DNA of 64,000 bases from Macrostomum lignano (lineage: Eukaryota), in the NCBI GenBank assembly GCA_002269645.1, contig NIVC01000440.1, positions 434,001 through 498,000 on the forward strand. Reading direction: 5' to 3'. Numbering within the stretch: the first letter of the stretch is position 1; every line of letters starts with the position of its first letter. Positions 9,015-64,000 of this stretch are shown in pieces. A program made the translations under genes and the position numbers. Below the pieces are notes generated by a model. That model had not been told where the DNA came from, did not search any database, and worked only from the letters and a program-made list of their open reading frames with translations.

Positions 9015-9054
9015 AGTTGCTTATTAGATAGGAAGAGATAGGTACACATGGGTG

Positions 9055-9678: not shown

Positions 9679-10167
9679 CCCAATGAAAAGAGTTAAAAGT
9701 TTTAAACTGGCCCTGCACACAAAAGTTTCTACAAGTCATTTTTTACTTGTTTACACTTTTCACCGCAGTTTCAGTTAAAAATGAGATTGTAAATATTTGT
9801 TTTTATTGTTGAATGAGCGCACATCATGTATTGGAATTTTTACTTTAAACTCAGGCATTGCCCGGATGAGGAGCAAAGGAAGCTGAGGACAGCCCAGATG
9901 AGAATGATATGGAGTGACTCAAGAAAACAACTTCAATTCCTTGAGTCTGCACTCGGTAATCCAGAAAAAATAATTTGCATTTTCATTAACGCAGCAGCCG
10001 CTCATGGGCTCAACTGCCCGAGGTTCGCAGCGAACACCCCACTTTAAGATGGCGAAGTCCATACAGATGAAGGACGGACCAGAATCCTTAAAGAGATGAT
10101 TACCTGTCAGCTTGATGGCTATAGAAGATCAAATATACACGGAATCCTTGAAACCAGACTGAAGTTG

Positions 10168-14482: not shown

Positions 14483-17400
14483 TGTTGTGACAGACGGACC
14501 GATTTTCAAAAAATAAAATTGGATGTTCAGCGTTCGTGTGCTGCGGCCGTTGGGTTGCCAGGAGAGCTTCAGCTGATTCTAGGTCTGATGAAGCTGTGAG
14601 AAGGCCCCCCGCGGACTGCTTGCTCCGATGTGGCTGGCTGGAGCGCTGCAGCCAATGGGGACCTCAAACTGAATAAGAGATGGGAAGCTGAAGCAGAAAA
14701 GCGTTGTTGCACTCGAGAAATTTCAGCGGTTCTTGCTGTTCAGCAGCCGATCTTTTCTATCGCAGAAGAGTTCAGCGTCCTTTCCCTGCCAGCCTGAAGT
14801 GTTGGCAAAATATCATGGGCTTTTGTCCGGGTGCCGGTCTGCATCGTGGCGCATTGCTTTTCAAACCGTTTAAAGCATTACTGCAGCCGCTGACAGACCA
14901 TCGCGAAGGGGCCGCAGGGGAGAGGGGAGTTCTGGGCGCTGCATGATCTGCATGACCTGCACAGAATCTGGACTAACGAACCGATATGGCACAGTAATCC
15001 CCTCTGCTAAGTGACCCTTCACCAATGCAAGCTCAATTCCGACTCAAATTTGACAAATTGGACTATTTGCAGAAATAGTTTGCGTAACTGCTAGGCCAAG
15101 GCTTTGTGGTACATGCGATTGAAGTTCTAGCTTGCTGCGCATGCAGTCTCTTTTATTGTCTGTCCAAAGTTGATCCTCAAGTTTATTACGCGGTCGTGTG
15201 GCCTCGCGATTAAGCCACTAGTTTGTTTCTTTAGTTGCTTAAATGGACTAACTGGTTTGATTGGTAGTTGCTGCCACCAGGTTCCTGAGGTTCCTAATCT
15301 TAGTACTTAGCAACTGATTGAGACAGGAACGGTCCAACAGAATGTGATAAAGTTATTTTCAGTAAATAAGAGGTTTTGAACATTAACTTCCCTATTATTT
15401 CCTGCTTTAGGAGCCGTTTGGGCGTGATTCCCAATTTACTAGGGCATGACTCCTCTCGTGAAATCTAGTTTTCTATGTTCTATTTCCAACTTTCAACTTA
15501 TAGTTAAAAAGTTAAAAGTTTTTAAGGGTCGGGAGACGACATTTTTTTCATTTGATAAGTTGGGCCAAAAATATTTACCCTGCGCTTCAGCCCTAGGGAG
15601 GGCTCCTACGCAAATATTATATTTTAGGCTCAGTGTTCATAATAAATTTAGTCCAATTATGAGCGATTGAGAAGAAACGCATCAAATAAGAGATGAAGAT
15701 TAAAAGATAAAACGACGAAAGATCGAAGGTCAAGAGGCTAAAACAAATAATGAAGAAATAAGAGGTGACGATGGCCTAAAACAAATTAGAAGAATTTAAA
15801 ACAAATATTGGGGATATAACTATACATAAAACAAATAGGTGAATTTAGAAATATATAATAAAACATTATTTCAATAAAGCTAATGTATAAAACTAACACA
15901 AATAACTTAAAGTGCAAAGTATATTCAGTGGCAAAATTGTTCCCAAGAGATAAAATTATAGCCTCAATGGTTGATTTATTGATTTTCTGTTCGAACAGAG
16001 TCAGTCAGTCTAAAAATCCTTATTATGAAGGATTCCAACTAATGCAACCTAACCATACATAAACTAGAATCCCAATCGGGGAAAACCAATTAAATCTACT
16101 AAAAGGTGCAAAATATAGATCCCTAATTAAGGCAAAAGCGGCCAGCCTAGTGATATTCCTAGAATAGCCCAGGGCAACCTCCGTAGACTAAAGACTGTTC
16201 GACCAAAAAAGCACAAATAAAAATAAATAATATACAGTGATTAGAACATGTAGTGTAAGTAAGGTGAACATAAAACTAAAAAACTAATACTGTCCATCCG
16301 TATTAAATCACAGAGTAATAAAGCGTACCCACCCCGGTGGGAGATGCGCAACGCGGATTTTTCCCAAATAATTATTTAATGTATTCAAGTTTTCAACTCC
16401 GTCTATTAAGGGTCGGGAGACGACAGAAGCCCATCTGCTCTTTACTTGTAAGGTATCCCGCAAGATCTAACTAACCTAATTACTGATGTTTCCGCAACTG
16501 GAAGCTACTATCAATAGCGTTAAAGCAAATTCACTGTGATTAAACTATGCCCAAACTAAAAATTGCAAGTTAAATTTGCGTTGTTCTCCTGTTGTCTCTT
16601 ATTAGTGTCGGGAAGTGTAAAATATTGTTCTGTACCATATTCTCTACAAGCACACAGCTAGCGGGCTGCCAAAGGTAGATACTGGGATAAGCTATAGCTA
16701 TGTTCATCTGATCAGCCCATGCTCCCTGAACTGAGGGTCGAACTGCCACTCATCCAACCATATAAGGCAGCAACATCCCCCTCTTCTCCATCTCCAGCTG
16801 CGGCCGCTGTTGCAGCAATCACATCCTGTTTTCCGTAATTACTAAGGGCTTTCGCTGCTGCTGTCGCTGCCCATGGACTTCTAGCGTGTCTGGGAGAGGA
16901 GCTCCGACTGACGGCAAACACGCCATTTTTATCCTAATGGGTTACATTTAAGTGCAGAGTATGCAGCCCCTGCATGGACAGTTCAAGTAGGACTTTCCAC
17001 TTGATTCAATTTCGTTAGAAGGCGACGAGGCGACGTATCTTGGCCGTGTCTTAGTATGCTCAAGAGAAATCGAATTTTTCTCCCCCAATTTCGTCTATGG
17101 CTAAACCCGATACGCCAAATGCACGTTCCCTACCAGAAGTCAGCCCATTTCTAAGAAATGAATTGTAGCAACCTTCTGAGCCGAGCCCTAGGACTGCACC
17201 GCGTGATGCAAAACATTTTCCATTCCAGTTGGCTAGTTTCTATAGTAGTCCTTGGTCCTAGCCACAGCTGACGCTTGGATTGGACGCAGGAACTTCTGGT
17301 CTTGACCAGAAGAGCGGAGAGCGGAGCTGCGCGACCTTGCCTGAAACTATTCGAGATGAGATAAACAGAACCCCCCCCGCCCCAGCTCCATCAATCTCCA

Positions 17401-41476: not shown

Positions 41477-44400
41477 TCACTGCTGACTGGCGGAGGCGGC
41501 TGCGGCTGAAGCGTTGCTGCGCTGTTTGAGCAGAGTCCAGTCGAAGGTGTAGTCAAACTGATGGTTGAGCGTGCGGAACAGGATGCGGAACAGCTGCCTC
41601 AGGTACATGTAGTCCGGCGCCTCCTCGAACCGCAGGCCGCGGCAGTAGTTCAAGTACATGGTGAACTCGGCAGGGAAGCCTTTGCACAGGCCTTCAACTG
41701 GGGTGGACATTTTCTTTTCGCTGATCTTCTGGTACTTCTGCTTCTTGTTAGCAGCCTGCAACAGTTTGAATGTACAGAAGAGGGGGTTCGTTGGTCAACC
41801 TGGGGTGTTTGAGTCAACCTTGAGTGTTTGGGTCAACCTTGAGTGTTTGGGTCAACCTTGAGTGTTTGAGTCAACCTTGAGTGTTTGGGTCAACCTTGAG
41901 TGTTTGGGTCAACCTTGAGTGTTTGAGTCAACCTTGAGTGTTTGGGTCAACCTGGGGTGTTTGGGTCAACCTGGGGTGTTTGAGTCAACCTTGAGTGTTT
42001 GGGTCAACCTGGGGTGTTTGAGTCAACCTTGAGTGTTTGGGTCAACCTGGGGTGTTTGAGTCAACCTTGAGTGTTTGGGTCAACCTGGGGTGTTTAAGTC
42101 AACCTGAGTGTTTGGGTCAACCTGGGGTGTTTGGGTCAACCTGTGGTGTTTGGGTCAACCTGGGGTGTTTGGGTCAATTTTAGGTATTTGAGTTCACCTC
42201 GGGTAGTTGGGTCAACCTGGGGTATTTGGGTTAACATAGGATGCTGGTGTCAACCTGGGATGCTGGGGTCAATCTGGGATGCTGGGGTCAATCTGGGATG
42301 CTGGTGTCAACCTGGGATGCTGGTGTCAACCTGGGATGCTGGGGTCAACCTGGGATGCTGGTGTCAACCTGGGATGCTGGGGTCAACCTGGGATGCTGGT
42401 GTCAACCTGGGATGCTGGTGTCAACCTGGAATATTAACAATACAAAAAAATTCTGACCTGCAAACCCTGCCAGGGCAGTGAGCCGCGATTAAAGTACATG
42501 AGCACGTAGCCCAAGGCCTCCATATCGTCTCGGCGCGATTGCTCAATGCCTAAATGAGCATTGATAGAGGCGTACCTGGCCGTGCCAGTCAAGTTCTTGT
42601 CCTCGCTGCGGAATTTGAGTTAACTTTGAGCTGATTTTCTGACTGGACGCTAATTTTTCTACTGTAAGTAGCATAACCGACATTTTGAACATAAAAATGA
42701 TGATTAAAAATAAGGAAACGCACCGGTAGGGGATGTGCTTGCCGGAGCGACTGTCCCGGTACTTCTTGGCTAAGCCAAAGTCGATGATGAACACCTGCGG
42801 GATATTAAAATGCTTGAGAGTTAGTTAAAGTTTTTACCATCGCTGAGGCAATTCAGCGTCAGCGTTAATTTTACAGCGTCAATACTGTACTGTACAGCGG
42901 CCCTGACTTTGGTGGCGAGTCTAACAGTCTAGAGCTTACAACATAACTACCTGCATTTAGCTCACCTTGTTGCAGTGCCGCCCAATGCCCATGAGGAAGT
43001 TGTCCGGCTTGATGTCGCGATGGATAAAGTTCTTATTGTGCACGTATTCGATTCTGTTGATCATCTGATCGGCCAGCATCAGCACAGTCTTCATCGTGAA
43101 TCGCCGTGAGCAGAAGCTGAACAGATCCTCAAGGCTGGGCCCGAGCAGGTCCATCACCAGCACATTGTAGTCTTTTTCTACGCCGAACCAGCTAAGTTTA
43201 AGTGGGTTACATGGAATTACCCGTTAGTAACTATCAAGGTTCTTTAAATCTATCCCATTCTGAAGCGCTTGCCAATGAGTGAAAAGCACTCACCGAACAT
43301 GAGGTATGCCGATGCCACCTTGAAGCAGTTTGTACAGCTTGCTTTCATAGAGCAACTGCGGATGGCGGGCCTTCTGACTTTCCAGCTTAACTGCGATTTC
43401 CTAAAAGCATTTTTAAATAGGCTTGGTGTAATTGAATGGTATATCACTTTAACTGGGGGTTGAAGGCTTGAATGTCTGTTTTTGTTTGTTTGAGGTTGAA
43501 ATTTGTTTTACACATTCAAGCATTATCTTACCAATTGCACATTTGCACTTTTTAATGTAATTTCACAGTGGATTTTATGTTATAAAGTTTTGTTATACAA
43601 TTACATTTTTAGCTCACTTGCAAAATATGTAGCATTTTTCTAAAAATTTTCCATCTTAATCCTACTAGACAGTAATTATATGCTGGAATGAAAATTCTAG
43701 TTTTTTTATTCTTTGCCTCTATAAATCAAAAAATTTGCCAAGAATAAGGTGCTTTCATGCTAATTTTCTTATAATATCAATATATTCTTTGAAGTGAGAG
43801 TTTTATTAAACTTTAAAGTGTTTGTTTTTTATAGAAGTTTATAATCCTCCTTTTAATTTTACTCTCTATAAGTTGCTAACAATTTTTACATGCTTGGGCA
43901 TAACCAAGGATTCACCCAGCCATTTCTATTGACAACACACACATGTAAGTTGCTATTGGATGGAATAGTAGTCACGTGACTGCTCTCAGCCAATAGCGAC
44001 TTACATGTGTGTGTTGCCAAAAGAAATGGCCAAGTGATTCCCAAGGTTGCGCATGTATGAATTTTTATTTTAAAAAGTTTTCTTTAATCACAATTAGGCT
44101 ATACCATATATGCCAAACCTGAACTTGGCCATTTTTGCTATATTAAGATCCTTAGTAAGAGGCAAAATTTTAGCATAAAAGCTGCCTTATATTATAGACT
44201 ATGGGCATATAGTATTAGACTACCTAGGTTTAGGACCTTGTTGCTAGAGGCCAAACAAGTACTCAACTGAGTATTCTACATGTTGAGTAATTGACTCTTT
44301 TTTCAACTACTTGACTGTCAAGAAATTTTACTCAGGTCAAGTTGAAAAGTTGAGTATTTTTATGGGTGTTTATATAGATAATATATATAGGGTAAAAATG

Positions 44401-47400
44401 CCCTTCAATATATGAAATATCAATATGGCAATGAAATTTCAACAAGGCATTTTCCTTTTTTTAACAATTGTATCAGTTGTATTGTTGTGCACATCTTGGT
44501 ATTATTATACAAAAAATAACTAAATGGAACACTAACTGGAAATATTATCACTATTTTTTTATTCCATCTAAGGATTTCTTCAGATCCTTATACAAGAATT
44601 TGGCTAGCTAACCAGCTGCAACTACAGCTAGACACTCCTAGAAATATGGATGTCATATTTGGCAATTACAACTTAGCTAGACAACTTAGTGCTGCAGCCT
44701 TTGTTTCATAGAACTCTCATGGAATGACACATATAAGCAAAAATTTATTAGTATATTTTTATTACTTTAATACAAGGGGTGATCAAAAAGTTCTGCAACC
44801 TTTTGTTATAGCTTTTAGTAATAGAATCGACAAAAGCCAAAAACTTACACATATGCGGCTATATCTGTTTGCTATATTTATATACATTTTTGGCTTCCAA
44901 ATGTGCTCCAGTCAAATTTCACAGCCATATATTTTCCATGTGTTTTCAGTAGCTGATGGAAACATCAAAAGACAGTGTTCGCTTCTATATCTTTATGTGC
45001 ATGCAACTTGGTTGCAAAGTGACTGAGATTCATACCGATCGGGTGAATGTTTTAGCTGACTCTGCTCCATCATTTGACACAGTTGCCCGCTGGCTGCGCC
45101 ATTTCTTGGAAGGCTGGGACAGCTTCAACGATGAACCGAGGTCTGGCCGACCCCGGACATCCATGACCGAAGATGTCGTGGCCCATGCCGATGCAATAAT
45201 TCGTGAGGATTGGAGCATTACGCTAAGATTCCTTGCCTATGAGCTTGGTGTCAGCTATGGAAGTGCTCATAACATCATGCATGAGCGACTGGGCTGCACA
45301 AAGACCTGCGCTCGGTGGGTACCCCATCTTCTCACTCCGGAGCAGCAAGCAGAGAGGGTGCGCATCTGTCTCTTGTGGGTGCAAATTTTTGAGCCCCATG
45401 GCCCACGACGACTGTCGGATGTCATCACAGGAGGCGAATGTTGGATCTCATTCTTTTACCAAGAAGGATAAGCAGTCCAACATGGTCTGGCTGGCAGAAG
45501 ATGAGCCTGAGGCCCAAGGTGCTGAAGACCGGATTCCGCAGTTGGAAGCGGATATTCACCATTTTTTCAACTCTCAGGGTGTTGTATCAGTAAACATACT
45601 TCCAGTGGGTGCCACAGTAACTGCCAGGTACTACATAGACACATGCTCTGCCAGGCGTGCTGCAGGAGCGGCAGGAACGTGCGCGAACCAGGCATGGACC
45701 TTGACTACTGCTGCACCATGACAATGCGGCACCACACAGAGCGGCCTCAACCATGGCGTACCTGGAGCAGCAGGAGGTCCGGCTGCTGCCCCATCCACCC
45801 TACTCTCCAGACCTAGCACCCTGTGACTTTTGGCTGTTCCCGAGGATCGAATCCATCATTTCTGGGAGGCCGTTTTCACACATACAAGACCTTGCCCAAG
45901 TGGTACATTCAGCTCTACAGGGTATACCAACTTCTGAGTACCATGACTGCTTTCAGACATGGTGCACACGCATGCGACGGTGCATGGATAGTGGTGGAAA
46001 GTACTTTGAGGGAATGTGACACTGATTAGACGCCGTGGTTGCTGTAACACTGAGTTGTGAGGTCACTTGCAGAACTTTTTGATCAGCCCTTGTATTATTC
46101 ATTTATTTTGATTATTATTTATTATTTAATTTCAAATAAACTAATAAAAACATTTAAAAATAATATAAATTATTTATGATACAATATATTCATATATATC
46201 TTTATATAAAATGACATTATGACAGTATGACTATTAAAAATGCTGCATAAAAATGTGCAGATTACTTGCTTAACATTTCTTGACTACTCAACATAATATT
46301 TCAGCATATTTTTGGAGTGTGCGCTGTGCGCGAAGCTAAAATATGAATTTGTGCACCGAGGTGTACATTCATTTATTGACAAATACATAGCTAACTAATG
46401 CGCTGTAGCACTAAAAACTCAGTAAAAATCCAATTAAAACAAAACTAAAAAACGGATAAATTTCACTGGGTAACAGTTAAAAAATCGTCAGAGTTTTCTC
46501 AGCTGATTCAGACTAATTTTGGTGCTCTGAGTCTGAATATCACATTGATTTTGCCCTATCAGGTCAACTTTTTGAGATACAGCCATACGTCTACCTGACG
46601 GGCTATGCATATATGCTAATACTATAGGGGTCTTAAGTTCCACTTTTGTATCTATGATATATAGGCCCTACATTATTTTAGTATTATATTTATATGTTAT
46701 TTAAATAAATATATCATTTATATATTATATTATATTATATATGTTCATCAATATATAGCATCCTGCCATTACTTTCAGCTTATTGATATGGCTTCGGCTC
46801 GACGGTCATGCAGGAATAATCCTGACGTTTTCTGCTACATCTGCAGAGAATACACGCTATCAGTAGACAGGAAGAACATCACAGGATTTGTGAAGCGTGC
46901 CTACTAGGCTTATTTTAAAGTCAAGTTGGGTGACCAAGATAAGTCCTGGGCACCCCACATAGTGTGCAAGACGTGCGTGGAATACCTCCGGCGGTGGACA
47001 AAGGGCCCAAAAACTTCACTGAAGTTTGGAATTCTGATGGTTTGGAGGGAGCCATTTGACCATGCATCGGATTGTTACTTCTGCGCCATCAACACTACTA
47101 GTATCAACAGGAAGAATTGGCATAGCCTCCAGTACCCCGACCTTCCATCTGCCCGCCGTCCAGTTGCTCACTGCGAATAAATTCCAATACCAGCATTCAC
47201 AGAGCTTCCTGATTGTGATGCTGAGACCCTGAGCACTACAGATGAGGATGGAGATGCAGAAGACAAATATGAAGCACAAGATGGTCCACAGCCTTTTTCA
47301 CAATGTGAGCTTAATGATCTGGTTTGGGATCTCAGCTTGTCAAAGACTTCTTCCGAGCTGTTGGCCTCGAGACTCAAAGAGAAAAATCTTCTTGGCAAGG

Positions 47401-53450: not shown

Positions 53451-56400
53451 ATGGCAACCAAAGAAGAAGATGACGAGTCGCTGATGCGGCAGTTCTGCGG
53501 TTACACTACCGCGCACGGGCTCGGCCGCTTCGGGGCCCAGACTGGCGCCATCGGCCGCGGCCTGTGGATCTGCTTCCTGCTGGGCACCTACGGCGGCTTC
53601 ACTTTCCACATGTACAGCCTCGGCCAGCAGTTCGCCGCGGTGCCTCTGAGAACCAGTCTGAGCACTTCGTTGCCGTTCGAGTTTCCCGACGTGTACTTTT
53701 GCCCGACCGATTTGGTTACTATGAGTCGGGCAAGTCCGCAGGTGAGGCGCTCTGAGGATCGAGGTTGCTATGACAATTTATGCACTGATGTATTTCAACT
53801 GTACGTGTACACAGTAGTTTACAGTAACTGAAGTTCTTGCTGGTGCCCCTTCTGGCTGGCGCCATTGCTGCAGGCGTAGCGCCATATTTTACAACATTCC
53901 AGGTGAACATCAAAGAGCTGACCAGGGCCCTGACCTGCGACACCGACTGCAAGAAGCAGCTGAAATTCGACATCCATTGGAGCCCAGAATCCGGCACGAC
54001 TAGCGCTGCCCAGTATGGACCGGCTGCCCAGGGGCTGCTGCACGTGATCTCGGCAGTTGAGAGCAACATCTCGCAGTCCTTGCACTATGGAAAGAACAGT
54101 GAGGAACCTGCGATTCTGTGATGCTTTTGGCCATGGTGCTGGCGCCCCTGGTGCTGGCGCCCCTGGTGCTGGCGCCCCTGGTGCTGGCGCCCCTGGTGCT
54201 GGCGCCCCTGGTGCTGGCGCCCCTGGGGCTAAAGCCCTTTGTGCATGCATATAAGACAGATAGAGGATAGACAAATAATAAGGCAACAATCATTTCATAA
54301 AATGTGATTAAATTGTGTCAAGTAGGAATAAAAAATAAACCACAGTATATTGCCCAGGATCCCACTATGTACTTCTTAGACACGCGGTAGTAGCAACGTT
54401 CTAGTATTACTTAGTTATTTTCACTTGCGGTTATTTTAGCCTCTGTCAGCACCTGCCGTACAACACTTGGCGGAGAAGAGTACATAGGAAACTTGTCCAT
54501 CGTACATCTGTTCGGCACCGCCCAGGTCAGGGAACCAGTGTCCGACATCAATAATCTGCCAAAAATTGCTCCCTACTTGTCCACCGCTAACTGCATCGGC
54601 TGGAATTCTGCGGCCAGGGAGCTTCAGGCCGCTGGGGTGCCGCTGGCAGCTCAAATCTTGGCCATGGGCTACTCCGAGGACGACAGCAAGTGCAGGCAGC
54701 CCCGCGGTTTGCCACTGAAGAGTTTTCAAGATAATTCCACTCGTGAGTGAGCCTTTTTCAGCCTGTAAAAATAACTGAGATTGCGATTAATAGCCTATGC
54801 TTTAGGATTGCATGTTTTTGTGAGGGTGCAGGCTAGGAAAGATATTTGTCGTCAATGTACACTCATTGGGGATACAGAAATTGAGGTTTGTGCGCTGGAG
54901 AATGAGTCACCAATGTACACTCATTGGGGGTAGAGAAATTGAGGTTTGTGCGCTGGAGAATGAGTCACCAGTGTACACTCATTGAGGGTAGAGAAATTAA
55001 AGCTTGTGAGTCACCATAGAGAATGATTCACCATATTCCAGACCAGATGCACCTGTACGTTGGCTGTCTGGATAAAAATGCGAGTGCAGCGGACTTTCCG
55101 CACCTGTGCCTGCAAGATCCATACGGTTGGATGAATCACGAGCGCTGCGCGGAGTGCTGCTACGTGGCCAATTACACCTACATGGCTCTGCACGGTGACC
55201 AGTGCCTCTGCGGTGAAGAGGTCAGCAATGTCACCGCGCTGTCCCTTAGCGACTTCGCTTGCAGCCGGAAGTGCCGGGGAAATATCGCCGAAGCCTGCGG
55301 CGGAGACGCTGCCGCGATTGTCTATCAAGTTCGGAGCTCAGGTGCGATTTGGCGGTTTAATGCGAGTGGGCTGATCAGTATGTTGGGTGAATGGAAGAGA
55401 GTGAATGTTCATGAGTTCTGTAATGAGTTCATGGGTGAGTTCATGGGTGAGTTCATGAGTGAGTACATGAGTGAGTTCATGCGTGAGTTATTGAGCCAAA
55501 AAAACACACCAAAGCCTCCAACCCGATTCGGGCAGGTTCCAACCCGCTGTTCATTCCTTTCCGAGCTTCAATCGACAGTTTCAACGAAGGCCCTTACTGC
55601 TTCTATAGAGGCAACAGCGGACAGCTGTCAGCCACCTACTGCAACGTACCGTTCTGTCGTAAGCCTTTACTAGCTACTGTAGTAGATTGTATCACACTGT
55701 AGTAGACTGTATCACACTGTAGTAGACTACATCGCACTGTAGTAGACTGTATCGCACTGTAGTAGACTGTATCGCAAAGAATACGTTGTATTTCGACTAA
55801 AATTAAATTTCATTTTTTTGTTAATCTTTCACCAGCGATCTCGCCCGGGTTTGACTGTTTGGCATTAAATAGCGAGGACCAGGTGAGCAGCGGGGAGTAC
55901 CTGCGCTACACTGGCTACAAGAGCCTCACCAACACCAAGGACTCCTGCATTGACTGGACTGCGATGCGACAGGCGCTTCTTAACGGCTCTCGGACCTTCC
56001 GCTTCGATGCTGAACCCTCCATCCTGACTGGTGAGCGCTGGTAGACCTTCAATGCATTCCACTGCACCGCCGTGTTAGACTTCCTGACACATCTTTTAAT
56101 TAGTTCAGATATCCTGAAGCACCCCGAATTCTGGAATACTGACACATACTGTGACTGTCTGACACACAGCTGCCATTCTGTGACTGACACACAGCTGTCA
56201 TCCCGTGACTGTCTGACACACAGGTGTCATCCCGTGACTGTCTGACACACAGCTGTCATCCCGTGACTGTTTGACACACAGCTGTCATCCCGTGACTGTC
56301 TGACACACAGCTGTCATCCCCTGACTGTCTGACACACAGCTGTCATCCCGTGACTGTTTGACACACAGCTGTCATCCCGTGACTGTCTGACACACAGCTG

Positions 56401-59400
56401 TCATCCCATAACTGTCTGACACACAGCTGTCATCCCGTGACTGTCTGACATACGCCCCCCTTCCAGTCAATATCCTTGATGTGTACATCGAAACCCCGGA
56501 CTTCGAGCTGTACAACTACGTATCGCGCCGGGTCTGCCGGGTTTTCAGATGTTTTGACGCAAAAAACGCAAATTATACTACTATCTGAAAATGAAGTAAG
56601 TAGTATACGAAAACGCTATCCTAAGCGTGATATATGGCAATATGTAGTCGTAATAATCCATGTGCTCATATATGTACATTAATTCCATGTACATTAATCC
56701 CTATCTATCTCAAATTGGATATGTACATTAATTCCATGTACATTAATCCCTATCCCAAATTGTCTATCCCCAATTCTATATGTACACTCACATTAATCTA
56801 CAGTGTCATCCCCAGACGGTCTGAGCGCGCACCAAAATTACATGTACAATACTACATGTACGCAGAGGCGAGAATTACTAATCTCATCTACTACCAAATG
56901 AGTCAACTAACAGTGTAGCGTACATCATGTATAAGTATTTACAATGAAGATATATTTACATTTAATCAGTAGCATATTACAGGAATCGAGACATGTACAC
57001 CATCACCAGCAAATAGAATATACAGAAAATTTTACATTGTTTTTCAATAATTTTCTCTTCATAAATGATTTTAAACCTCTCCCAAGTCTGCCCCCCAAAT
57101 GCAGGACTGTGTTGAAGCAGTGCTTTATATTTCTATTGACAGTGGGTATGATACAAGAAGCTTCGTCGCGCTTTAATTACAGTAAACCATCCCCTCGAAG
57201 CTCCTATACTGAATGCTGAATCACCCTTTAACTCGGACCATAGTCAAATTCAACCCTGTTCGAAAACAGCCACCCCTCCGATGTTCACCAGACTCGTCTT
57301 CACAGCGCAGACCCCATAGCAAAATCGAGCTAAATTTTAACACTCGCCCCTGTTCTCTCTGTCCCCCTTCTAAATGCCAAGGAATTTCGACCCTCTCTTC
57401 ATTTTCAGTGTACAGACAGATCTTTCCACAGCACAGACCATATATTAAACTTCAAAACCCCTCTCTTCTCCGATTACGTCATCCATGCCGCCCCAGATAG
57501 CAAGAAACCAACTTTTAATGCACACATCAACCCCCGCGAGCAAATCCGAGTCCGCCAACCTCTACCTGCATTGACAAACCCCAGCTGCATTTGTAAATGT
57601 ACACAGCCTATGAATCAGTGTCTCCACCGCATGCAATTCTGATTTACTTGATCTAAACTTTGTAAGTAGTATAAGTCACCCTTGCGTTTACTAGAAGTAG
57701 TGAAGTCCACAAATTTAAATACGTGAGGCTATTCAATTCTGCCTCTCCGCCTCCCCTACCTTCTCACTTCAAGCTTTCAGACTTGGTCTTTGAGACGGTC
57801 GGTTTAATCTGTTAGAAGCAGGAATGAATCATGCACTGACCTCTCCATACAAAGTAAAGTTGGAATTTCAGACAAGAAATTTGGTTATTTTAAAAGCTAA
57901 ATGACTAGAAATGCACATTTTTTCATTAAAATGCAGCTTTTTACAGTTTTTTTACGATTTTAACCTTAAAATGCAGACTTTGTTGATCAAAATCAGTAGT
58001 TTCATCACTAGAAACCATACTTTCAACAGCTAATTTGTCCAAATGTCGCTTTCAACTTGACCTTAGACAGCTTTTAAGCAGGAATGAACCCCACACAAAC
58101 ATCCACAAGCCAGCCCAAAATCAGCCAAAGACATGGCTATTGAAGCCTAAATTGCTAGAAATGCACATTTTTTCAGAAGAAAATACAATTTTTCACAGTT
58201 TTTATGCATTTTTTACGTTAAAATGCAGACTTTATTGATCAAAATCAGTAGTTTCATCACTAGAAACCATACTTTCAACAGCTAATTTGTCCAAATGTCG
58301 CTTTCAACTTGACCTTAGACAGCTTTTAAGCAGGAATGAACCCCACACAAACATCCACAAGCCAGCCCAAAATCAGCCAAAGACATGGCTATTGAAGCCT
58401 AAATTGCTAGAAATCATGTCCTGTGTTACGACACTGCCTAGCAACCGTATAATTTTATTAATACATGAACTAGCACTCCTATTTTACATTCATTGAGAGG
58501 CGGCGGCAGCGGGTGGAGGGTGGCCAGACCGTGACTGTGCGCAGCACAGTCCCTGTCTCTACTGCCGCCTCCGCCCGCTGCCGCCGCCTCTCAATGAATG
58601 TAAAATAGGAGTGCTAGTTCATGTATTAATAAAATTATACGGTTGCTAGGCAGTGTCGTAACACAGGACATGCGTTTTTCTGTAAAGTAATAATAACCCC
58701 ACCATTAATATAGACAGTTGGTCGTGTAAACGAATAATTTGAAAGTTTAGTCTATGTTTTACAAAATGTCTCTATGAAAACTCATCTTCCTACTGACAGT
58801 AGAGTTTGCAAAAATCAGTTCTTGGAAGAATGCGACATTTTCGTGAAAATATTTAAACTGCTATATTGGGCCTATGACAGATTTTTATTGAGAAACTATC
58901 GTCATTTCCACAGAGAAAGATAAACATGTGAAGCTTTCGTGAAGATTACATCTTCATACTACGGGTGTCAAATTTTCCTGTATTTGACTGAACGTACGTG
59001 CATTTAGTCATAGTCGGGGGAGTACTTCAACCATTTCTCAGGTTTAAATCGGCTGCCGCTTGCATATGTACATCACATGTAAATGAACATGTGGTAAATC
59101 TGATGAGGAACTATGCATACATGCGCGAGTTGCCCGGAAAGAGCTGAGATTGATAGATAATGAAAAATCAGTAGGAAAGAGAGAATGAGGCTGCGTGACC
59201 ACCCACCCCATTATCCTGTCTTTCCGTTGCATGGCAGCACGTAATTAAATGTGTCAAGTGTACAATTGATTCAATCGATTACTCGTTTATACGCAAAGTA
59301 TCGAGAGAGTTTTTAATTGCATCCAAACTTTCTGACTAATGCATTCGTGTGTTCCAAAGAAGGAGACACTGATTCATAGGGTGTGTACATTGACAAATGC

Positions 59401-62400
59401 AATTACAGCACACATGGTAGGGTTGGCTTTGGTAGACGCGCGGATTTGCTTGGTTCGCATTGTTCATATATGTGCATCGAAATTTTTTTCTTGCTAACTG
59501 CTTCTATGGGGATGTATAGATGATGACGTAATCAGAGATAGGGCTTTGGTTGGGGGAGGCTGGGTCCGTGCTGTGAAAAGATCTGCTTGCTTCGTCAAAA
59601 TGTACATTGGGATTGAGAGAGAGGCCGGTCGAATTTCGTTGACAACTAGAAATGGAAAGGTTTGGTCAGAGAATAGGGGTGTATGTGTGTTTTGGCTTTA
59701 TTCAAAATGGTCTGTGCTGCGAAGACGAGTCCATTGACCATTGGGTGTTTGCTGTTTTGCCAATTCAGTATACTGAACCTGTTAAACTGATTGCCTCATG
59801 AGTCACTTTTCTGGGGTATGTGTAGGAGAGAGAGGCCTGAGAGAGACAAGGGCTCGATTTGGGTGGGTCCTCTGGCTCCATTCGTATTGGCCAATTTGGC
59901 GAATTGGCAAATCTACTTGCATGGGTTAAATTATTGAATATGGTCAGAGTTGAAGAATTTGGGGATGAATCAAGATGTAAAGTTGGCAAAAACAACACTG
60001 ATTCACCACATCTAAAAGATGACTGCTAGGAGCTTCGGAAATAAGACTACTGTACACAGCAGCATCAACAAAAGGTATTAAATTGTCAATCAAAATCGAC
60101 CCGTAGATGTGCGATTTTGCATGGTTTACAGTGTTCATATGTGCATCGAAAAATTTTGTTTCTTGCTAACTGCTCCTATGGGGGAGGTGGATGACGTAAT
60201 CAAGATAGGGTTTTGGTTGGAGGAGGCTCAATATATGAGTCTGTGCTGTGAAAATATCTGTTTATACACTGAAATTGGAGAGGGAGGGTCGGAATTCCTT
60301 GACAGTTAGAAATGGTAAGGTCAGAGAGACAGGGACGAGTGGTTCTGTTCTACATGGGTCTGTGCTGTGAAGACGAGTCTAATATGACCATTGGGTGTTG
60401 GGTGTTTTGCCAATTCCGTAATACACTAAACCTGTCCAGCTGATTGCCGCATGAGTCACTTTTCTCGGTGGGTGCAGAAGGAGAGAGAGAGAGGTCTGGG
60501 AGGGACAGTTTAAATGTCAATCGAAATCAACGGGCCGCTTCGCCGACTGTATATGTTAAAATTATTATAGCTAGGTTTATAGCAAACTGTGCGTTTTAAC
60601 CCAATATTCAAGAATAATCCCTTCCCTGACTTCTTGAGGGGTATTTCATGTACCAAATACATACATTTGAATGATGAAACAGCATTTTTGACGATTAAGT
60701 TGTAAAAATTATGGTTTCTGCTGATGAAGTGATTAATTTTGTTCAATAAAGTCAGCATTTTAACGTTAAAAAGAGTAAAAACTGTGAAAAATTGACAAGC
60801 TTTAAACCAAAATGCGCAAATTTCTAGTAATTTAGCTTTCAATGAAAATGTCTTGGGTGGAATTCCAACTTGGGCCGGGGTGTGCATATGGAGATCAGTG
60901 TGTGACTCATTCCTGCTCGAAAGCTGTCTCTTGCCAACTTTGAAATCAGCATTTGGACAAATTAGCGGTTGAAATTATGGCTTTTGGGATGAAACTACTA
61001 AGTTTGATCAATTCGCATTTCGCATTTTAACGTTAGAAAATAATAAAACTGTGAAAATTGGCCTTTATTAAACGAAAGAATGAGAAATTCTATGAATAGC
61101 TTTAAAAAAACGATGGCTTTAGTGGAAATTGGACTGGCTCGGGTAATCCGTGTGCGATTATAATTCCTGCTCAAAGCTGTCTCAGAGTTCCAGAAGTAGC
61201 ATTTGTGATAATTTTGTGTTAAAATTGTGGTTTTTAGTGATGAAACTACTGATTTTGATCAATAAAGTCTGCATTTTAACGTAAAAAATGCGTAAAACTG
61301 TGAAAATTTGTATTTTCTTATGAAAAAATGCTGATTTCTAGCAATTTAGGCTTCAATAGCCATGTCTTTGGTTGATTCTGGGGTGGCTTGTGGATGTTCG
61401 TGGGGGTTCATTCCTGCTTCAAAGCTGTCTAAGGTCAAGTTGAAAGCGACATTTGGACAAATTAGTTGTTGAAAGTATGGTTTCTAGTGATGAAACTACT
61501 GATTTTGATCAATATAGTCTGCATTTTAACGTAAAAAATGCATAAAAACTGTGAAAAATTGTATTTTCTTCTGAAAAAATGTGCATTTCTAGCAATTTAG
61601 GCTTCAATAGCCATGTCTTTGGCTGATTTTGGGCTGGCTTGTGGATGTTTGTGTGGGGTTCATTCCTGCTTAAAAGCTGTCTAAGGTCAAGTTGAAAGCG
61701 ACATTTGGACAAATTAGCTGTTGAAAGTATGGTTTCTAGTGATGAAACTACTGATTTTGATCAACAAAGTCTGCATTTTAAGGTTAAAATCGTAAAAAAA
61801 CTGTAAAAAGCTGCATTTTAATGAAAAAATGTGCATTTCTAGTCATTTAGCTTTTAAAATAACCAAATTTCTTGTCTGAAATTCCAACTTTACTTTGTAT
61901 GGAGAGGTCAGTGCATGATTCATTCCTGCTTCTAACAGATTAAACCGACCGTCTCAAAGACCAAGTCTGAAAGCTTGAAGTGAGAAGGTAGGGGAGGCGG
62001 AGAGGCAGAATTGAATAGCCTCACGTATTTAAATTTGTGGACTTCACTACTTCTAGTAAACGCAAGGGTGACTTATACTACTTACAAAGTTTAGATCAAG
62101 TAAATCAGAATTGCATGCGGTGGAGACACTGATTCATAGGCTGTGTACATTTACAAATGCAGCTGGGGTTTGTCAATGCAGGTAGAGGTTGGCGGACTCG
62201 GATTTGCTCGCGGGGGTTGATGTGTGCATTAAAAGTTGGTTTCTTGCTATCTGGGGCGGCATGGATGACGTAATCGGAGAAGAGAGGGGTTTTGAAGTTT
62301 AATATATGGTCTGTGCTGTGGAAAGATCTGTCTGTACACTGAAAATGAAGAGAGGGTCGAAATTCCTTGGCATTTAGAAGGGGGACAGAGAGAACAGGGG

Positions 62401-63332
62401 CGAGTGTTAAAATTTAGCTCGATTTTGCTATGGGGTCTGCGCTGTGAAGACGAGTCTGGTGAACATCGGAGGGGTGGCTGTTTTCGAACAGGGTTGAATT
62501 TGACTATGGTCCGAGTTAAAGGGTGATTCAGCATTCAGTATAGGAGCTTCGAGGGGATGGTTTACTGTAATTAAAGCGCGACGAAGCTTCTTGTATCATA
62601 CCCACTGTCAATAGAAATATAAAGCACTGCTTCAACACAGTCCTGCATTTGGGGGGCAGACTTGGGAGAGGTTTAAAATCATTTATGAAGAGAAAATTAT
62701 TGAAAAACAATGTAAAATTTTCTGTATATTCTATTTGCTGGTGATGGTGTACATGTCTCGATTCCTGTAATATGCTACTGATTAAATGTAAATATATCTT
62801 CATTGTAAATACTTATACATGATGTACGCTACACTGTTAGTTGACTCATTTGGTAGTAGATGAGATTAGTAATTCTCGCCTCTGCGTACATGTAGTATTG
62901 TACATGTAATTTTGGTGCGCGCTCAGACCGTCTGGGGATGATACTGTAGATTAATGTGAGTGTACATATAGAATTGGGGATAGACAATTTGGGATAGGGA
63001 TTAATGTACATGGAATTAATGTACATATCCAATTTGAGATAGATAGGGATTAATGTACATGGAATTAATGTACATATATGAGCACATGGATTATTACGAC
63101 TACATATTGCCATATATCACGCTTAGGATAGCGTTTTCGTATACTACTTACTTCATTTTCAGATAGTAGTATAATTTGCGTTTTTTGCGTCAAAACATCT
63201 GAAAACCCGGCGGATTTGGCGCGATACGTAGTTGTACACCAATGGCAGGAAGGCGAACAATTTCTGTCGAGCGGCCAGGGTTCTTCTGGATGCAGCGGTA
63301 ACCGAGCAGAAGACCGGCCGACATTACTTCAT
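53451..63332 (+). CDS. DEG/ENaC-family channel-like gene with kringle-like and WSC modules after TM1; exon 6 split by a foldback element; incomplete at window end
   Basis: Exons 53451-53741, 53903-54098, 54440-54742, 55042-55341, 55836-56030, 56467-56512 plus 63237-63332; all GT-AG with consistent phases. Pre-TM1 FCGYTTAHGL, TM1 LWICFLLGTYGGFTFHMYSL, post-TM1 FPDVYFCP. Exon 4 has the WSC cysteine pattern. TM2 is not in the window. Confidence 0.7.
54133..54228. repeat. 15-bp tandem repeat (GGTGCTGGCGCCCCT) in channel intron 2
   Basis: Seen directly. Confidence 0.92.
56140..56450. repeat. 29-bp tandem repeat (GACTGTCTGACACACAGCTGTCATCCCGT) in channel intron 5
   Basis: Seen directly. Smaller arrays also at ~54855-55010 (~59 bp x3), 55410-55490 (12 bp) and 55676-55775 (20 bp). 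Confidence 0.92.
56513..63234. mobile_element. 6722-bp foldback-type element with ~1.8-kb near-identical inverted arms; no transposase ORF seen
   Basis: Mirror positions sum to 119747 from 56509/63238 to about 58330/61417, and the mirrored ORFs in the track are identical or differ by one residue. TGTACA lies on both flanks. Confidence 0.9.
58415..58672. mobile_element. 258-bp palindromic MITE-like insert with perfect 99-bp arms
   Basis: 58415-58513 is the exact reverse complement of 58574-58672; the loop holds a second hairpin GACTGTGC-GCA-GCACAGTC. Confidence 0.88.
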
Positions 63333-63379
63333 GTAAGCGAGCTTTTAGATATAACATCTGTAATCGTCAACGAAGTATA

Positions 63380-64000
63380 TTATTCTATAGACTGCGCAAT
63401 GCAAGGACCCTATGCAGTACACAGTATTCTATGGACTGGACAATGCAATTTACCCAGTACATAGTATTTTATTAACTGGACAATGCAATTAAAAACTTAA
63501 ATACTTGAAAACCAAATCCAAACCACTACCAATAGAAAAGTCATCTTTGAGTTTATATAGTTCATAAAGTTGTACAGAAAAATAACAAATAATTTTGCGC
63601 TAACTTTTTCAGCCGGACAACTATAGTGGACACCGCTAAACCAGTCTGTCCGATTTCAATCACCAATGACGAGATACTACTCAGCTCATGCAGCATCGAT
63701 GCCTGCTGTGAGTAGTATCGCGCTCTACATAAACCAAAAATATGTAAAGCGTCCTCCAGAATGTTTTCCCTGTTCTCCAGAAATTAAATATTCTCGAACA
63801 CCCAGTCTAGCCTCCTAGTCTCGGAGATCTGCAAGGACAATGCAAGGACTCCAGTACTGTACATAGTATTCTATAGACTGGACAATGCAATTTTCCCAGT
63901 CTCGGACACTCGGAAGGTCTCGGACACCTAGTGTCGGATCCACCAAATCTCGGATACTCAGTCTTGGACACCCAGTCTCGGACACACCAAGTCTCGGACA
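63380..64000. repeat. Degenerate intronic repeats (CAGTACATAGTATTCTATAGACTGGACAATGCAA; CTCGGACAC)
   Basis: Dispersed and tandem copies seen directly. Confidence 0.7.

What the first reader, a model, noticed from the sequence alone, without database searches (positions are those of the whole stretch)
53451..56512. DEG/ENaC channel apparently carrying kringle-WSC-kringle modules in its ectodomain
Exon 1 encodes a DEG/ENaC N-terminus: HG motif (FCGYTTAHGL), TM1 and an FP.V..C motif. The in-frame exons that follow do not look like a normal finger domain. Exon 3 is kringle-like (TCRTTLGGEEYIGNLS..NCIGWNS..SKCRQP). Exon 4 is a clear WSC domain (YVGCLD..ERCAECC..YTYMALHGDQCLCG..ACSRKCRGNIAEACGG..IVYQ). 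Exons 5-6 form a second kringle-like unit (DCL..RYTGYKSLTNTKDSCIDW..ANNFCR). Kringle plus WSC is known from Kremen receptors, and WSC domains bind glycans and act in fungal wall sensors. I do not know this pair inside a DEG/ENaC. If real, it suggests a glycan-, matrix- or protein-gated (possibly tethered mechanosensory) sodium channel. The motifs are seen; the fusion and function are inferred; the kringle calls are weaker than the WSC call.
Basis: partly seen in the sequence, partly recalled or inferred. Interest (0 to 1): 0.85.

Follow-up and report, generated by a model that had tools for sequence, protein, structure and literature searches.

The report
Flatworm DEG/ENaC channel with WSC insert
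This gene of the flatworm Macrostomum lignano encodes a complete DEG/ENaC-type sodium channel with about 385 extra residues in its outer "finger" region (a WSC domain nested in the first of two kringle-like modules); the fusion is real, transcript-supported and shared by several paralogues, it sits in databases as a hypothetical protein, and its function is untested.

Summary
The window is Macrostomum lignano contig NIVC01000440.1 (434001-498000), and the finding is the 5' two-thirds of gene Mlig007204.g1 (PAA82974.1, 1052 aa). Exon 1 is a DEG/ENaC N-terminus (Pfam ASC, E 1.5e-10) and exon 4 is a WSC domain (E 6.9e-12).

The deposited protein can be rebuilt exactly from the DNA. It continues past the window into a full ectodomain and a FaNaC-like TM2 (GLWSGISVLTVCELIE). 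The annotation is RNA-seq based. At least three diverged full-length paralogues (about 33% identity) keep the same insert, and one checked locus keeps the same intron phases. So the fusion is real.

Corrections:
The WSC is therefore nested inside module 1, not placed between two modules.
- "ANNFCR" lies at 63253-63270. Exon 7 is split by a 6.7 kb foldback-like transposon that is absent from the homeologous copy.
- The kringle identity is only remote. It is below Pfam threshold. Profile searches of PDB hit only kringles (best single-kringle E 0.0013), but an AlphaFold model of module 2 does not look like a kringle.

All relatives found are from this one species, and I found no paper on them. 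Function (ligand or tether gating) remains inference.

The parts
53451..53741 (+). Exon 1. Start codon, cytoplasmic N-terminus with the HG motif (TTAHGL), TM1 (GLWICFLLGTYGGFTFHMYSLG) and the post-TM1 motif FEFPDVYFCP.
   Evidence: Pfam ASC 41.1 bits, E 1.5e-10, profile positions 1-84. 100% match to P0001 residues 1-97.
53903..54098 (+). Exon 2 (phase 0 to 1). First part of the finger region, residues 98-163. No Pfam hit of its own.
   Evidence: GT-AG junctions in frame. Part of the exact P0001 reconstruction.
54440..54742 (+). Exon 3 (phase 1-1). N-terminal part of kringle-like module 1, carrying Cys1 (STCRTT), Cys2 + Trp (NCIGW) and Cys3 (SKCRQP).
   Evidence: The three Cys, the Trp and CR.P are conserved in paralogues at about 33% identity. 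The profile of module 1 without the WSC hits only kringle proteins in PDB, but weakly (E >= 0.15).
55042..55341 (+). Exon 4 (phase 1-1). Complete WSC domain with 10 Cys.
   Evidence: Pfam WSC 45.9 bits, E 6.9e-12. phmmer to the yeast Wsc1 sensor domain 7pz2, E 2.1e-6. Foldseek of the AF2 model gives 7pz2 as top hit, E 1.3e-3, prob 1.00.
55536..55658 (+). C-terminal part of kringle-like module 1, carrying Cys4 (GPYCFY), Cys5 (TYCNVP) and Cys6 (FC).
   Evidence: This acceptor position reproduces P0001. It aligns to plasminogen/Kremen1 'GPWC....YC.IP.C'. hhalign of module 1 against module 2 gives prob 82.6%, E 9.7e-6.
55836..56030 (+). Exon 6 (phase 1-1). N-terminal part of kringle-like module 2, carrying Cys1 (DCL), RYTGYKSLTNTKDSC and IDW.
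   Evidence: Weak Pfam Kringle match, 11.5 bits, profile positions 8-32. The profile of module 2 against PDB gives 62/62 kringle proteins.
56467..56514 (+). Exon 7, first 48 nt (VNILDVYIETPDFELY). The exon is cut here by an insertion.
   Evidence: P0001 reads ...PDFELYTNGRKANNFCR across the break. The block boundary is AC..CA, so it is not an intron. The homeologue has a contiguous 142-nt exon.
56515..63238 (.). 6724-nt insertion inside coding exon 7. It is a non-autonomous foldback-like element with perfect 1836-nt inverted arms (56509-58344 and 61403-63238) that contain 252-nt tandem repeats. Target duplication is within the palindrome TGTACA (TA, GTAC or TGTACA).
   Evidence: Inverted repeat 100% complementary. 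Tandem repeats. Empty site GAGC-TGTACA-CCAATGG in locus L002. No Pfam domain on either strand. No other copy in the window.
63239..63332 (+). Exon 7, last 94 nt (TNGRKANNFCRAARVLLDAAVTEQKTGRHYF). Carries Cys3 of module 2 (NNFCR).
   Evidence: N.CR is invariant in the paralogues.
63613..63707 (+). Exon 8 (phase 2 to 1). C-terminal part of module 2, carrying Cys4 (KPVC), Cys5 (SSCS) and Cys6 (DAC). The frame stays open, and the next exon starts 43 nt beyond the window end.
   Evidence: The remaining exons lie at window-equivalent 64043-64407, 64704-64909, 65014-65109, 67105-67718 and 68627-68859. They encode the beta-ball/palm/thumb and TM2.

Best explanation
Shown:
- The region is the 5' part of Macrostomum lignano gene Mlig007204.g1. 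It has 13 exons and encodes a 1052-aa, apparently complete DEG/ENaC subunit whose closest solved relatives are the FMRFamide-gated channels.
- Between the first palm strands after TM1 and the conserved 'C.F....C...DF......G.C..FN' motif, where FaNaC has about 50 finger residues, it carries about 385 extra residues encoded by six exons.
- Those residues form a kringle-like six-Cys module with a WSC domain nested between its third and fourth Cys, followed by a second kringle-like six-Cys module.
- Every insert exon or exon pair is bounded by phase-1 introns, and one diverged paralogue keeps the same intron positions.

Inferred: the block entered a phase-1 intron of an ancestral channel gene by exon shuffling, before the paralogues diverged.

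Inferred, about 0.3: the protein assembles as a trimeric Na+ channel in which this finger-borne adhesive module binds an extracellular glycan or protein. That binding would either tether the finger to matrix or act as a ligand sensor that biases gating. The finger is the region that carries gating modulators in ENaC and the degenerins.

Shown: in this copy, exon 7 is interrupted by a young 6.7 kb foldback-like transposon. The near-identical homeologue Mlig028168.g1 is intact and is the safer candidate for the functional gene.

The confidence figure refers to the architecture and gene structure, not to the gating mechanism.
For: Identity of the locus:
- The window is identical to NIVC01000440.1.
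- P0001 (PAA82974.1) is rebuilt exactly from the DNA, with GT-AG at all true junctions.

Channel core:
- Pfam ASC 131.2 bits, E 7.4e-38, in three stretches, plus WSC, on the full protein.
- FaNaC 7yvb E 7.9e-12. TM2 ADLGGALGLWSGISVLTVCELIELL aligns to FaNaC ADIGGTLGLWMGISVLTIMELMELI.
- The only strongly hydrophobic stretch besides TM1 is at residues 975-1004.

Transcript basis: the annotation was built from RNA-seq (StringTie/TACO), a BLAT-mapped de novo transcriptome and TransDecoder (PMC5730564).

Conservation:
- P0102 (1091 aa), P0106 (1033 aa), P0004, P0011 and P0007 share the insert at 30-35% identity.
- All module Cys, the Trp after Cys2, CR after Cys3 and GP.CF are invariant or nearly so.
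- The P0106 locus has the same exon boundaries and phases.

Nesting of the WSC:
- Module 1 has 3 + 3 Cys on either side of the 10-Cys WSC.
- With the WSC removed, module 1 aligns to contiguous module 2 from Cys2 to Cys6 (hhalign prob 82.6%, E 9.7e-6).

Kringle affinity:
- The module 2 profile hits only kringle proteins in PDB (62/62; tPA kringle 2 E 0.0013; ROR1 E 0.005).
- The module 1 profile hits only kringle proteins (10/10; Kremen1 and plasminogen on top, E 0.15).
- Sub-threshold Pfam Kringle hits of 10.6-16.1 bits occur at the same place in six of the proteins scanned.

WSC fold: Foldseek top hits are Wsc1 (E 1.3e-3) and then Kremen1 (E 0.035, 170 columns).

Extracellular location: 7 N-glycosylation sequons in the insert and even Cys counts per module.

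Transposon.
Against: - No functional data of any kind.
- All relatives with the insert come from one species, so the family may be a lineage-specific oddity.
- The transcript evidence is short-read assembly. The jump over the transposon shows that the supporting transcript came from an uninterrupted copy (the homeologue or another allele). Expression of this exact copy is therefore not shown.
- Kringle membership fails Pfam's threshold.
- The AF2 model of module 2 alone (pLDDT 77, 5-sequence alignment) gives no kringle among the top 50 Foldseek hits. Instead it gives weak beta-sheet matches to RNA polymerase lobes.
- The AF2 model of the whole insert is only pLDDT 64.
- The homeologue comparison has only 15 substitutions (5 synonymous, 10 non-synonymous), so it says nothing about selection.
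- Paralogue P0106 has G-I-F instead of G-x-S at the filter.
- All insert exons are frame-symmetric, so isoforms lacking part or all of the insert are possible.
Confidence: 0.85

Rival explanations
1. Annotation chimera. A separate secreted WSC/kringle-like gene lies inside a long intron of an ordinary DEG/ENaC gene, and transcript assembly fused them. M. lignano does produce polycistronic precursor RNAs.
For: The annotation paper reports that almost 7% of assembled transcripts are precursors encoding two or more proteins (PMC5730564). The insert exons are all frame-symmetric, so they could be removed without breaking the channel frame.
Against: - One uninterrupted 1052-codon frame crosses all 13 exons with GT-AG junctions.
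- The insert has no start codon/signal peptide or stop codon of its own.
- The same fused frame exists at independent paralogous loci with about 33% identity. The one locus checked also has identical intron phases. A chance artefact would not repeat like this.
Confidence: 0.03
2. The insert is an optional cassette. The main product is a conventional channel of about 667 aa (exon 2 spliced to exon 9), and insert-bearing isoforms are minor or tissue-specific.
For: Exon 2 ends and exon 9 begins in phase 1. Exons 3-6 are each 1-1 and exons 7+8 together are 1-1. Shorter database models of paralogues lack the WSC (P0006) or parts of module 1 (P0007).
Against: - The deposited RNA-based models of three diverged paralogues (this gene with its near-identical homeologue, P0102 and P0106) all include the complete insert.
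- The short models come from an older, fragmentary gene set and are truncated at both ends.
- Conservation of all insert Cys over about 33% identity argues that the insert is under selection.
Confidence: 0.15
3. The two 'kringle-like' modules are not kringles. They are a lineage-specific Cys-rich fold that shares only short motifs with kringles.
For: - No Pfam Kringle hit reaches the 34.3-bit cut-off (best 16.1).
- Both fail the PROSITE kringle signature as I recall it ([FY]-C-[RH]-[NS]-x(7,8)-[WY]-C): the sequences read KCRQ and FCRA, with no W/Y-C 7-8 residues later.
- The modules are about 140 aa against about 80 for a kringle.
- The AF2 model of module 2 (pLDDT 77) is rich in long beta-hairpins and gives no kringle in the top 50 Foldseek hits.
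Against: - Profile searches of the whole PDB return kringle proteins only (62/62 and 10/10).
- All kringle landmarks occur in the right order in both modules and in all paralogues: C..G..Y.G....T.SG..C..W, N[FY]CR, GP.C and C.[IV]P.C, with six Cys.
- The AF2 alignment had only 5 sequences.
Confidence: 0.35
4. The copy in this window is a dying gene. The transposon in exon 7 abolishes a functional product, and only the homeologue works. This does not contradict the architecture.
For: - A 6724-nt insertion lies in coding sequence, and the site is empty in the homeologue.
- The only GT...AG pair that would remove it in frame (56510...63248) has a weak donor (CT|GTACAA) and no polypyrimidine tract.
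- Perfect 1836-nt arms indicate a very recent event.
Against: - Apart from the insertion the frame is intact, and it differs from the homeologue by only 15 of 3159 coding bases.
- The insertion could be polymorphic in the sequenced line or, less likely given the target-site duplication, an assembly error.
- Cryptic splicing would cost only 5 residues (ELYTNGRK to ELK).
Confidence: 0.45

Closest known systems
FMRFamide-gated sodium channels (FaNaC) and the DEG/ENaC superfamily (Pfam ASC, PF00858)
   Same: - HG motif, TM1, post-TM1 FP.V..C, the C.F....C...DF......G.C..FN motif and the Cys-rich thumb region.
- A TM2 almost identical to FaNaC, including G-I-S.
- FaNaC 7yvb is the best solved match (E 7.9e-12).
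   Different: About 480 residues stand where FaNaC has about 50 in the finger, and they include a WSC domain and two Cys-rich modules. No described DEG/ENaC carries these. Three other M. lignano DEG/ENaCs tested by others did not respond to FMRFamide-type peptides (PMC9234716). Whether those include this family is not stated there.
Kremen1/2 ectodomain (Kringle-WSC-CUB, Dickkopf co-receptor)
   Same: This is the animal protein recalled (from memory) to pair a kringle with a WSC. Kremen1 is the top PDB hit of the module 1 profile and the second family in the Foldseek search of the insert model (5fwt, E 0.035, 170 columns). In Kremen1 the domains pack rigidly against each other (PMC5014086 abstract).
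   Different: - Domain order: here the WSC sits inside the first kringle-like module rather than after it.
- No CUB domain (no Pfam CUB hit).
- A second kringle-like module is present.
- The host is an ion channel, not a single-pass receptor.
- The kringle similarity is far below family thresholds.
Yeast Wsc1 cell-wall integrity sensor (WSC/CRD domain, PDB 7pz2)
   Same: The WSC domain matches by sequence (E 2.1e-6) and by fold (Foldseek E 1.3e-3, prob 1.00, TM-score 0.55 normalised to the target). In Wsc1 this domain is the extracellular head of a mechanosensor and works through surface aromatic clusters (PMC9024836).
   Different: Wsc1 is a single-pass fungal sensor with a Ser/Thr-rich stalk that signals through a kinase pathway. 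Here the domain is part of a channel ectodomain in an animal without a cell wall. Conservation of the aromatic clusters was not examined.
Finger-domain elaborations in other DEG/ENaCs (ENaC GRIP domain; extra Cys-rich regions of nematode degenerins MEC-4/MEC-10). From general knowledge, not tested here.
   Same: The same region of the fold is the variable, regulatory one. It receives lineage-specific insertions that control gating: proteolytic release of inhibitory tracts in ENaC, and links to extracellular matrix proteins in the touch-receptor complex.
   Different: Those elaborations are family-internal sequences, not recognisable mobile extracellular domains acquired by exon shuffling.

Membership tests
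DEG/ENaC (Pfam ASC PF00858) | Profile score above the curated cut-off. | tested here: met
   Exon 1 alone scores 41.1 bits (cut-off 23.6). The full protein scores 131.2 bits, E 7.4e-38, in three stretches covering profile positions 1-84 and 288-455 among others.
DEG/ENaC (Pfam ASC PF00858) | Cytoplasmic HG motif before TM1, and two transmembrane helices flanking a large ectodomain. | tested here: met
   TTAHGL at residues 19-24 and TM1 at about 36-58. The second hydrophobic peak is at residues 975-1004. TM2 is encoded outside the window.
DEG/ENaC (Pfam ASC PF00858) | TM2 with the G-x-S selectivity-filter motif and a conserved acidic residue. | tested here: met
   GLWSGISVLTVCELIELL aligns to FaNaC GLWMGISVLTIMELMELI. 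Paralogue P0102 has G-V-S, and P0106 has G-I-F.
DEG/ENaC (Pfam ASC PF00858) | Trimeric, amiloride-sensitive cation current. | not testable with these tools
   Needs heterologous expression and electrophysiology.
WSC domain (PF01822) | Profile score above the cut-off over the whole model, with the conserved Cys framework. | tested here: met
   45.9 bits, E 6.9e-12, profile positions 1-82 of 82. 10 Cys in the exon. Five further M. lignano relatives reach E<=0.001.
WSC domain (PF01822) | WSC/PAN-like fold. | tested here: met
   In the AF2 insert model, Foldseek's two top hits are the Wsc1 CRD 7pz2 (E 1.3e-3 and 2.5e-3, prob 1.00), then Kremen1. Model confidence is moderate (pLDDT 64).
WSC domain (PF01822) | Carbohydrate or protein ligand binding. 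| not testable with these tools
   Needs a glycan array or pull-down with the recombinant domain.
Kringle (PF00051) | Profile score above the curated cut-off (34.3 bits). | tested here: not met
   Module 1 has no hit at E<=1. Module 2 scores 11.5 bits, and its counterparts in five related M. lignano proteins score 10.6-16.1 bits.
Kringle (PF00051) | Six Cys in the order C1...C2-x2-W...[FY]CR...P.C...C.[IV]P.C. | tested here: met
   Present in both modules and invariant or nearly so across paralogues. Spacing is much longer than in canonical kringles (about 140 against about 80 residues).
Kringle (PF00051) | Significant similarity to solved kringles. | tested here: inconclusive
   For the module 2 profile, all 62 PDB hits are kringle proteins, with best single-kringle E 0.0013. 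For the module 1 profile, all 10 hits are kringle proteins but at E >= 0.15.
Kringle (PF00051) | Kringle fold with 1-6, 2-4, 3-5 disulfides. | tested here: inconclusive
   The AF2 model of module 2 (pLDDT 77, 5 sequences) gives no kringle among the top 50 Foldseek hits. The shallow alignment makes the model unreliable. Disulfide connectivity was not examined.
Kremen family | Ectodomain order Kringle, then WSC, then CUB on a single-pass receptor. | tested here: not met
   The WSC is nested inside module 1. There is no CUB hit on the full protein. The host is a two-TM channel.

The most novel reading that the evidence does not exclude
This is a self-tethered or glycan-gated DEG/ENaC. The finger-borne WSC/kringle-like module would bind extracellular matrix or a surface glycan directly. 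Displacement of the tissue or binding of the ligand would then be transmitted to the gate without separate tether proteins. That would be a one-polypeptide version of the tether model proposed for nematode touch channels, in a flatworm that can be made transgenic.
Probability: 0.15. Interest if true: 0.85.

Novelty: new variant of a known kind. Interest (0 to 1): 0.55.

Why it matters
DEG/ENaC channels are gated by very different stimuli (protons, peptides, proteases, force), and the finger domain is where much of that diversity is written. This is a small family in which a recognisable adhesion or sensor module has been shuffled into that exact spot and then kept through gene duplication. The module includes a WSC domain of the kind that heads the yeast cell-wall mechanosensor and forms part of the Kremen receptor ectodomain.

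If the module binds matrix or glycans, these channels give a direct way to ask how an extracellular attachment is coupled to a DEG/ENaC gate. Macrostomum lignano has established transgenesis (PMC5730564); RNAi there is from general knowledge, not checked here. The frame-symmetric exon structure offers a natural deletion construct, exon 2 joined to exon 9.

It is also a clean example of exon shuffling into an ion channel, and of one extracellular domain nested inside another.

If the insert turns out to be inert decoration, the finding is an annotated curiosity in one species.

Tried and rejected
- Word-indexed protein search with my first 429-aa spliced model found nothing, not even the locus's own protein. 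That index evidently does not cover these sequences, so I ran no further search on it.
- The exhaustive search and the structure tool refuse spliced sequences. I used exon 1 alone for the single exhaustive search and exact sub-sequences of database proteins for folding.
- I first read VNILDVYIETPDFELYNY (56467-56519) as a possible palm strand before TM2. I dropped this once the inverted repeat, the deposited protein and the homeologue showed it to be the middle of module 2.
- I considered the 6.7 kb palindrome as an intron (GT 56510...AG 63248, in frame) or as an introner-like element. I rejected this as the annotated structure because the deposited protein keeps YTNGR and the homeologue has an empty site.
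- I considered a PacBio foldback assembly artefact. That is unlikely, because the inserted sequence is foreign to the locus and is flanked by a duplicated target.
- A regex search for a G-x-S TM2 in all six frames of the window, and a Pfam scan of the + strand 56000-64000, found no further channel exon inside the window.
- Rfam found nothing in the window.
- phmmer of single modules against PDB was uninformative for module 2 and marginal for module 1. Paralogue profiles were needed.
- dN/dS between the homeologues had too few differences.
- The exon structure of P0102 could not be derived because locus L004 was not delivered to the scripting area.

Full report
**What is there**

On the + strand from 53451, a start codon opens a 97-codon exon. 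It encodes MATKEEDDESLMRQFCGYTTAHGL, a hydrophobic helix and FEFPDVYFCP. Pfam places it on positions 1-84 of the amiloride-sensitive sodium channel model (41.1 bits, E 1.5e-10).

Downstream exons with canonical GT-AG sites continue the same frame. The exon at 55042-55341 is a complete WSC domain (45.9 bits, E 6.9e-12).

**Identity of the locus**

An exhaustive phmmer search with exon 1 against 1.84 billion representative proteins found a 1052-aa protein that is 100% identical over the exon. It also found a handful of relatives at 40-61% identity.

- The protein is PAA82974.1 / A0A267GC91 of the free-living flatworm Macrostomum lignano. One source names it only 'hypothetical protein BOX15_Mlig007204g1' and another 'WSC domain-containing protein'.
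- Its contig, NIVC01000440.1 of assembly GCA_002269645.1, is base-for-base identical to the window. The window is therefore positions 434001-498000 of that record.

**Gene structure**

I rebuilt the deposited protein exactly from the DNA.

- In the window: 53451-53741, 53903-54098, 54440-54742, 55042-55341, 55536-55658, 55836-56030, 56467-56514 joined to 63239-63332, and 63613-63707.
- Beyond the window: five more exons at window-equivalent 64043-68859.
- All junctions are GT-AG except the join 56514/63239, which is AC..CA.

The part beyond the window encodes the conserved GCTFGEHLCTIDDFTTVFHPEFGVCHRFN motif, the Cys-rich region, and TM2 (NLMADLGGALGLWSGISVLTVCELIELL). The full protein scores 131 bits on Pfam ASC in three stretches. 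Its best solved relatives are the FMRFamide-gated channels (7yvb, E 7.9e-12), whose TM2 is nearly identical, including G-I-S.

I found no further channel exon inside the window.

**Is the fusion real?**

Three lines of evidence say yes.

- The assembly's annotation is not ab initio. It is a genome-guided transcriptome built from RNA-seq, plus a BLAT-mapped de novo transcriptome, with ORFs called by TransDecoder (PMC5730564).
- A single frame of 1052 codons crosses all exons. The insert has no start, signal peptide or stop of its own.
- The architecture recurs at other M. lignano loci. P0102 (1091 aa) and P0106 (1033 aa) are full length with TM1, insert, core and TM2. P0004, P0011, P0007 and P0006 are partial models. 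They are only 30-35% identical to this protein, yet every Cys of the insert is conserved. The P0106 locus has the same exon boundaries and phases through the insert.

A near-identical homeologue, Mlig028168.g1, lies on another contig, as expected for this recently duplicated genome.

**Anatomy of the insert**

With it, the picture changes.

- Exon 3 carries three Cys: C..(L/G)G.EY.G, then C..W, then CR.P.
- Exon 5 carries three more: GPYCF, YC.VP and C.
- The 10-Cys WSC exon lies between them.
- Module 2 (exons 6-8) has the same six landmarks without interruption: DC, YTG....T..(D/G).C..W, N(F/Y)CR, P.C and C.I..C.
- A profile of module 1 with the WSC removed aligns to the module 2 profile from Cys2 to Cys6 (hhalign probability 82.6%, E 9.7e-6).

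The arrangement is therefore module 1 with a nested WSC, followed by module 2. It is not kringle-WSC-kringle.

Exons 3, 4, 5 and 6 are each phase 1-1. Exons 7+8 together are 1-1, and exon 2 ends and exon 9 begins in phase 1. This is the signature of modules acquired by exon shuffling. It also means the whole block could be skipped in frame.

Relative to FaNaC, protein residues 98-579 stand where FaNaC has residues 156-206. That is the finger region, between the first palm strands and the beta-ball.

**Are the modules kringles?**

The evidence is mixed, and I report it as such.

In favour:
- A five-paralogue profile of module 2 searched against all PDB sequences returns 62 hits at E<=10. Every one is a kringle protein (HGF, tPA, ROR1/2, prothrombin, plasminogen, apolipoprotein(a), Kremen1). 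tPA kringle 2 scores E 0.0013.
- The module 1 profile returns 10 hits, all kringle proteins, led by Kremen1 and plasminogen, but only at E 0.15 or worse.
- Sub-threshold Pfam Kringle matches (10.6-16.1 bits) fall on the same YTG...C..W segment in six of the proteins scanned.

Against:
- Nothing reaches Pfam's 34.3-bit cut-off.
- Both modules fail the PROSITE signature as I remember it.
- The modules are about 140 residues rather than 80.
- An AlphaFold model of module 2 alone (pLDDT 77, five-sequence alignment) is dominated by long beta-hairpins. It finds no kringle among its top 50 Foldseek matches.

The model of the whole insert (pLDDT 64) does recover the WSC fold. Yeast Wsc1 7pz2 is the top hit (E 1.3e-3), followed by Kremen1 over 170 columns (E 0.035).

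My reading is that these are strongly derived kringles with long loop insertions (about 0.6). The alternative is a lineage-specific Cys-rich fold that keeps kringle-like motifs (about 0.35).

**The interruption in this copy**

A perfect 1836-nt inverted repeat (56509-58344 and 61403-63238) brackets 3 kb of repeat-rich sequence.

- The deposited protein reads straight across it (PDFELYTNGRKANNFCR).
- The homeologue has the uninterrupted sequence GAGC-TGTACA-CCAATGG and a 142-nt exon.
- The window copy therefore carries a 6724-nt insertion in coding exon 7. The duplicated target lies within the palindrome TGTACA.
- The element has no recognisable protein domain on either strand and no other copy in the window. 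It looks like a young, non-autonomous foldback-type transposon.
- A cryptic GT (56510)...AG (63248) pair would remove it in frame at the cost of five residues, but both sites are weak.
- The 'intron' in the deposited model is an alignment gap of a transcript that came from an uninterrupted copy.

**How it most likely works**

Shown: the channel core has every sequence hallmark of a working DEG/ENaC subunit, and the insert is extracellular. It has seven N-glycosylation sequons and even Cys counts per module, and it lies between TM1 and TM2.

Inferred from family knowledge: the finger is the regulatory part of the DEG/ENaC ectodomain. WSC domains act as extracellular binding or sensor heads (yeast Wsc1, PMC9024836; Kremen1, PMC5014086). 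Kringles are protein-binding modules.

The most likely mechanism is that the insert binds an extracellular glycan or protein and thereby tethers or allosterically modulates the gate. I put this at about 0.3. A purely structural or assembly role, or an auto-inhibitory plug, are alternatives I cannot separate.

**Distribution and novelty**

I scanned the best 95 of the 97 significant hits of the exon 1 search, plus two longer models of the same genes. 96 of these 97 proteins match ASC. Six have a WSC at E<=0.001, all from M. lignano, and one further M. lignano protein pairs the channel N-terminus with a fibrinogen C-terminal domain. The next relatives are ordinary cnidarian and mollusc channels.

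Full-text searches found no paper that combines ENaC or sodium channel with WSC and kringle, and none that mentions these gene identifiers. A FaNaC study sampled M. lignano DEG/ENaCs for phylogeny and tested three of them with peptides, without comment on such inserts (PMC9234716).

The protein is thus already in public databases with its ASC and WSC hits visible, but it is undescribed. I class it as a new variant of a known kind. It is of moderate interest, which would rise sharply if the insert proves to gate the channel.

Noticed in passing
window 56509-63238: A 6.7 kb foldback-like element with perfect 1836-nt inverted arms, each containing 252-nt tandem repeats, and no protein domain. It is inserted in a coding exon at a TGTACA site. 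The homeologous locus L002 has the empty site. The deposited gene model silently skips it with a non-canonical AC..CA 'intron'.
   Followed up: yes
protein P0005 (M. lignano A0A1I8IY71), not in the window: Another M. lignano DEG/ENaC-like model joins the TM1/post-TM1 region (Pfam ASC E 1.1e-7) to a fibrinogen C-terminal domain (E 2.1e-13). Ectodomain domain capture may be recurrent in this species' channel family, or this short older model may be a mis-join.
   Followed up: no
protein P0106 (PAA86857.1), locus L003: This full-length paralogue has G-I-F instead of G-x-S at the TM2 filter position (LGLWSGIFVLTICELLEF), and its WSC is too degenerate for Pfam. It may be a non-conducting or modulatory subunit.
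   Followed up: no
window 54134-54230, 54853-54998, 55412-55489, 55676-55776, 56151-56450: Five of the gene's introns in the window (all except the first) contain a minisatellite with a unit of 12 to 58 nt. The largest is 10.5 copies of a 29-nt unit ending 16 nt before exon 7.
   Followed up: partly
window 42960-43223 (-), 44953-46016 (+), 12533-14578 (-): Neighbouring features: a protein-kinase exon on the minus strand (Pkinase 40.9 bits), whose gene reaches to about 51167 according to the contig's gene call; remnants of a mariner-type transposase (HTH_32/HTH_48 and DDE_3); and a rhodopsin-family GPCR in two open segments (7tm_1 67 bits).
   Followed up: partly
window 1-10000: The first 10 kb is dominated by long low-complexity or tandem arrays that are open in several frames on both strands, with extreme strand skew (GC skew -0.67 in 1-2000).
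   Followed up: no
module 2, protein residues 407-548 (window exons 55836-56030, 56467-56514/63239-63332, 63613-63707): Unresolved conflict: sequence profiles of this module hit only kringles in PDB, yet its AlphaFold model (pLDDT 77) is a beta-hairpin-rich fold whose weak Foldseek matches are RNA polymerase beta-subunit lobes, not kringles.
   Followed up: partly
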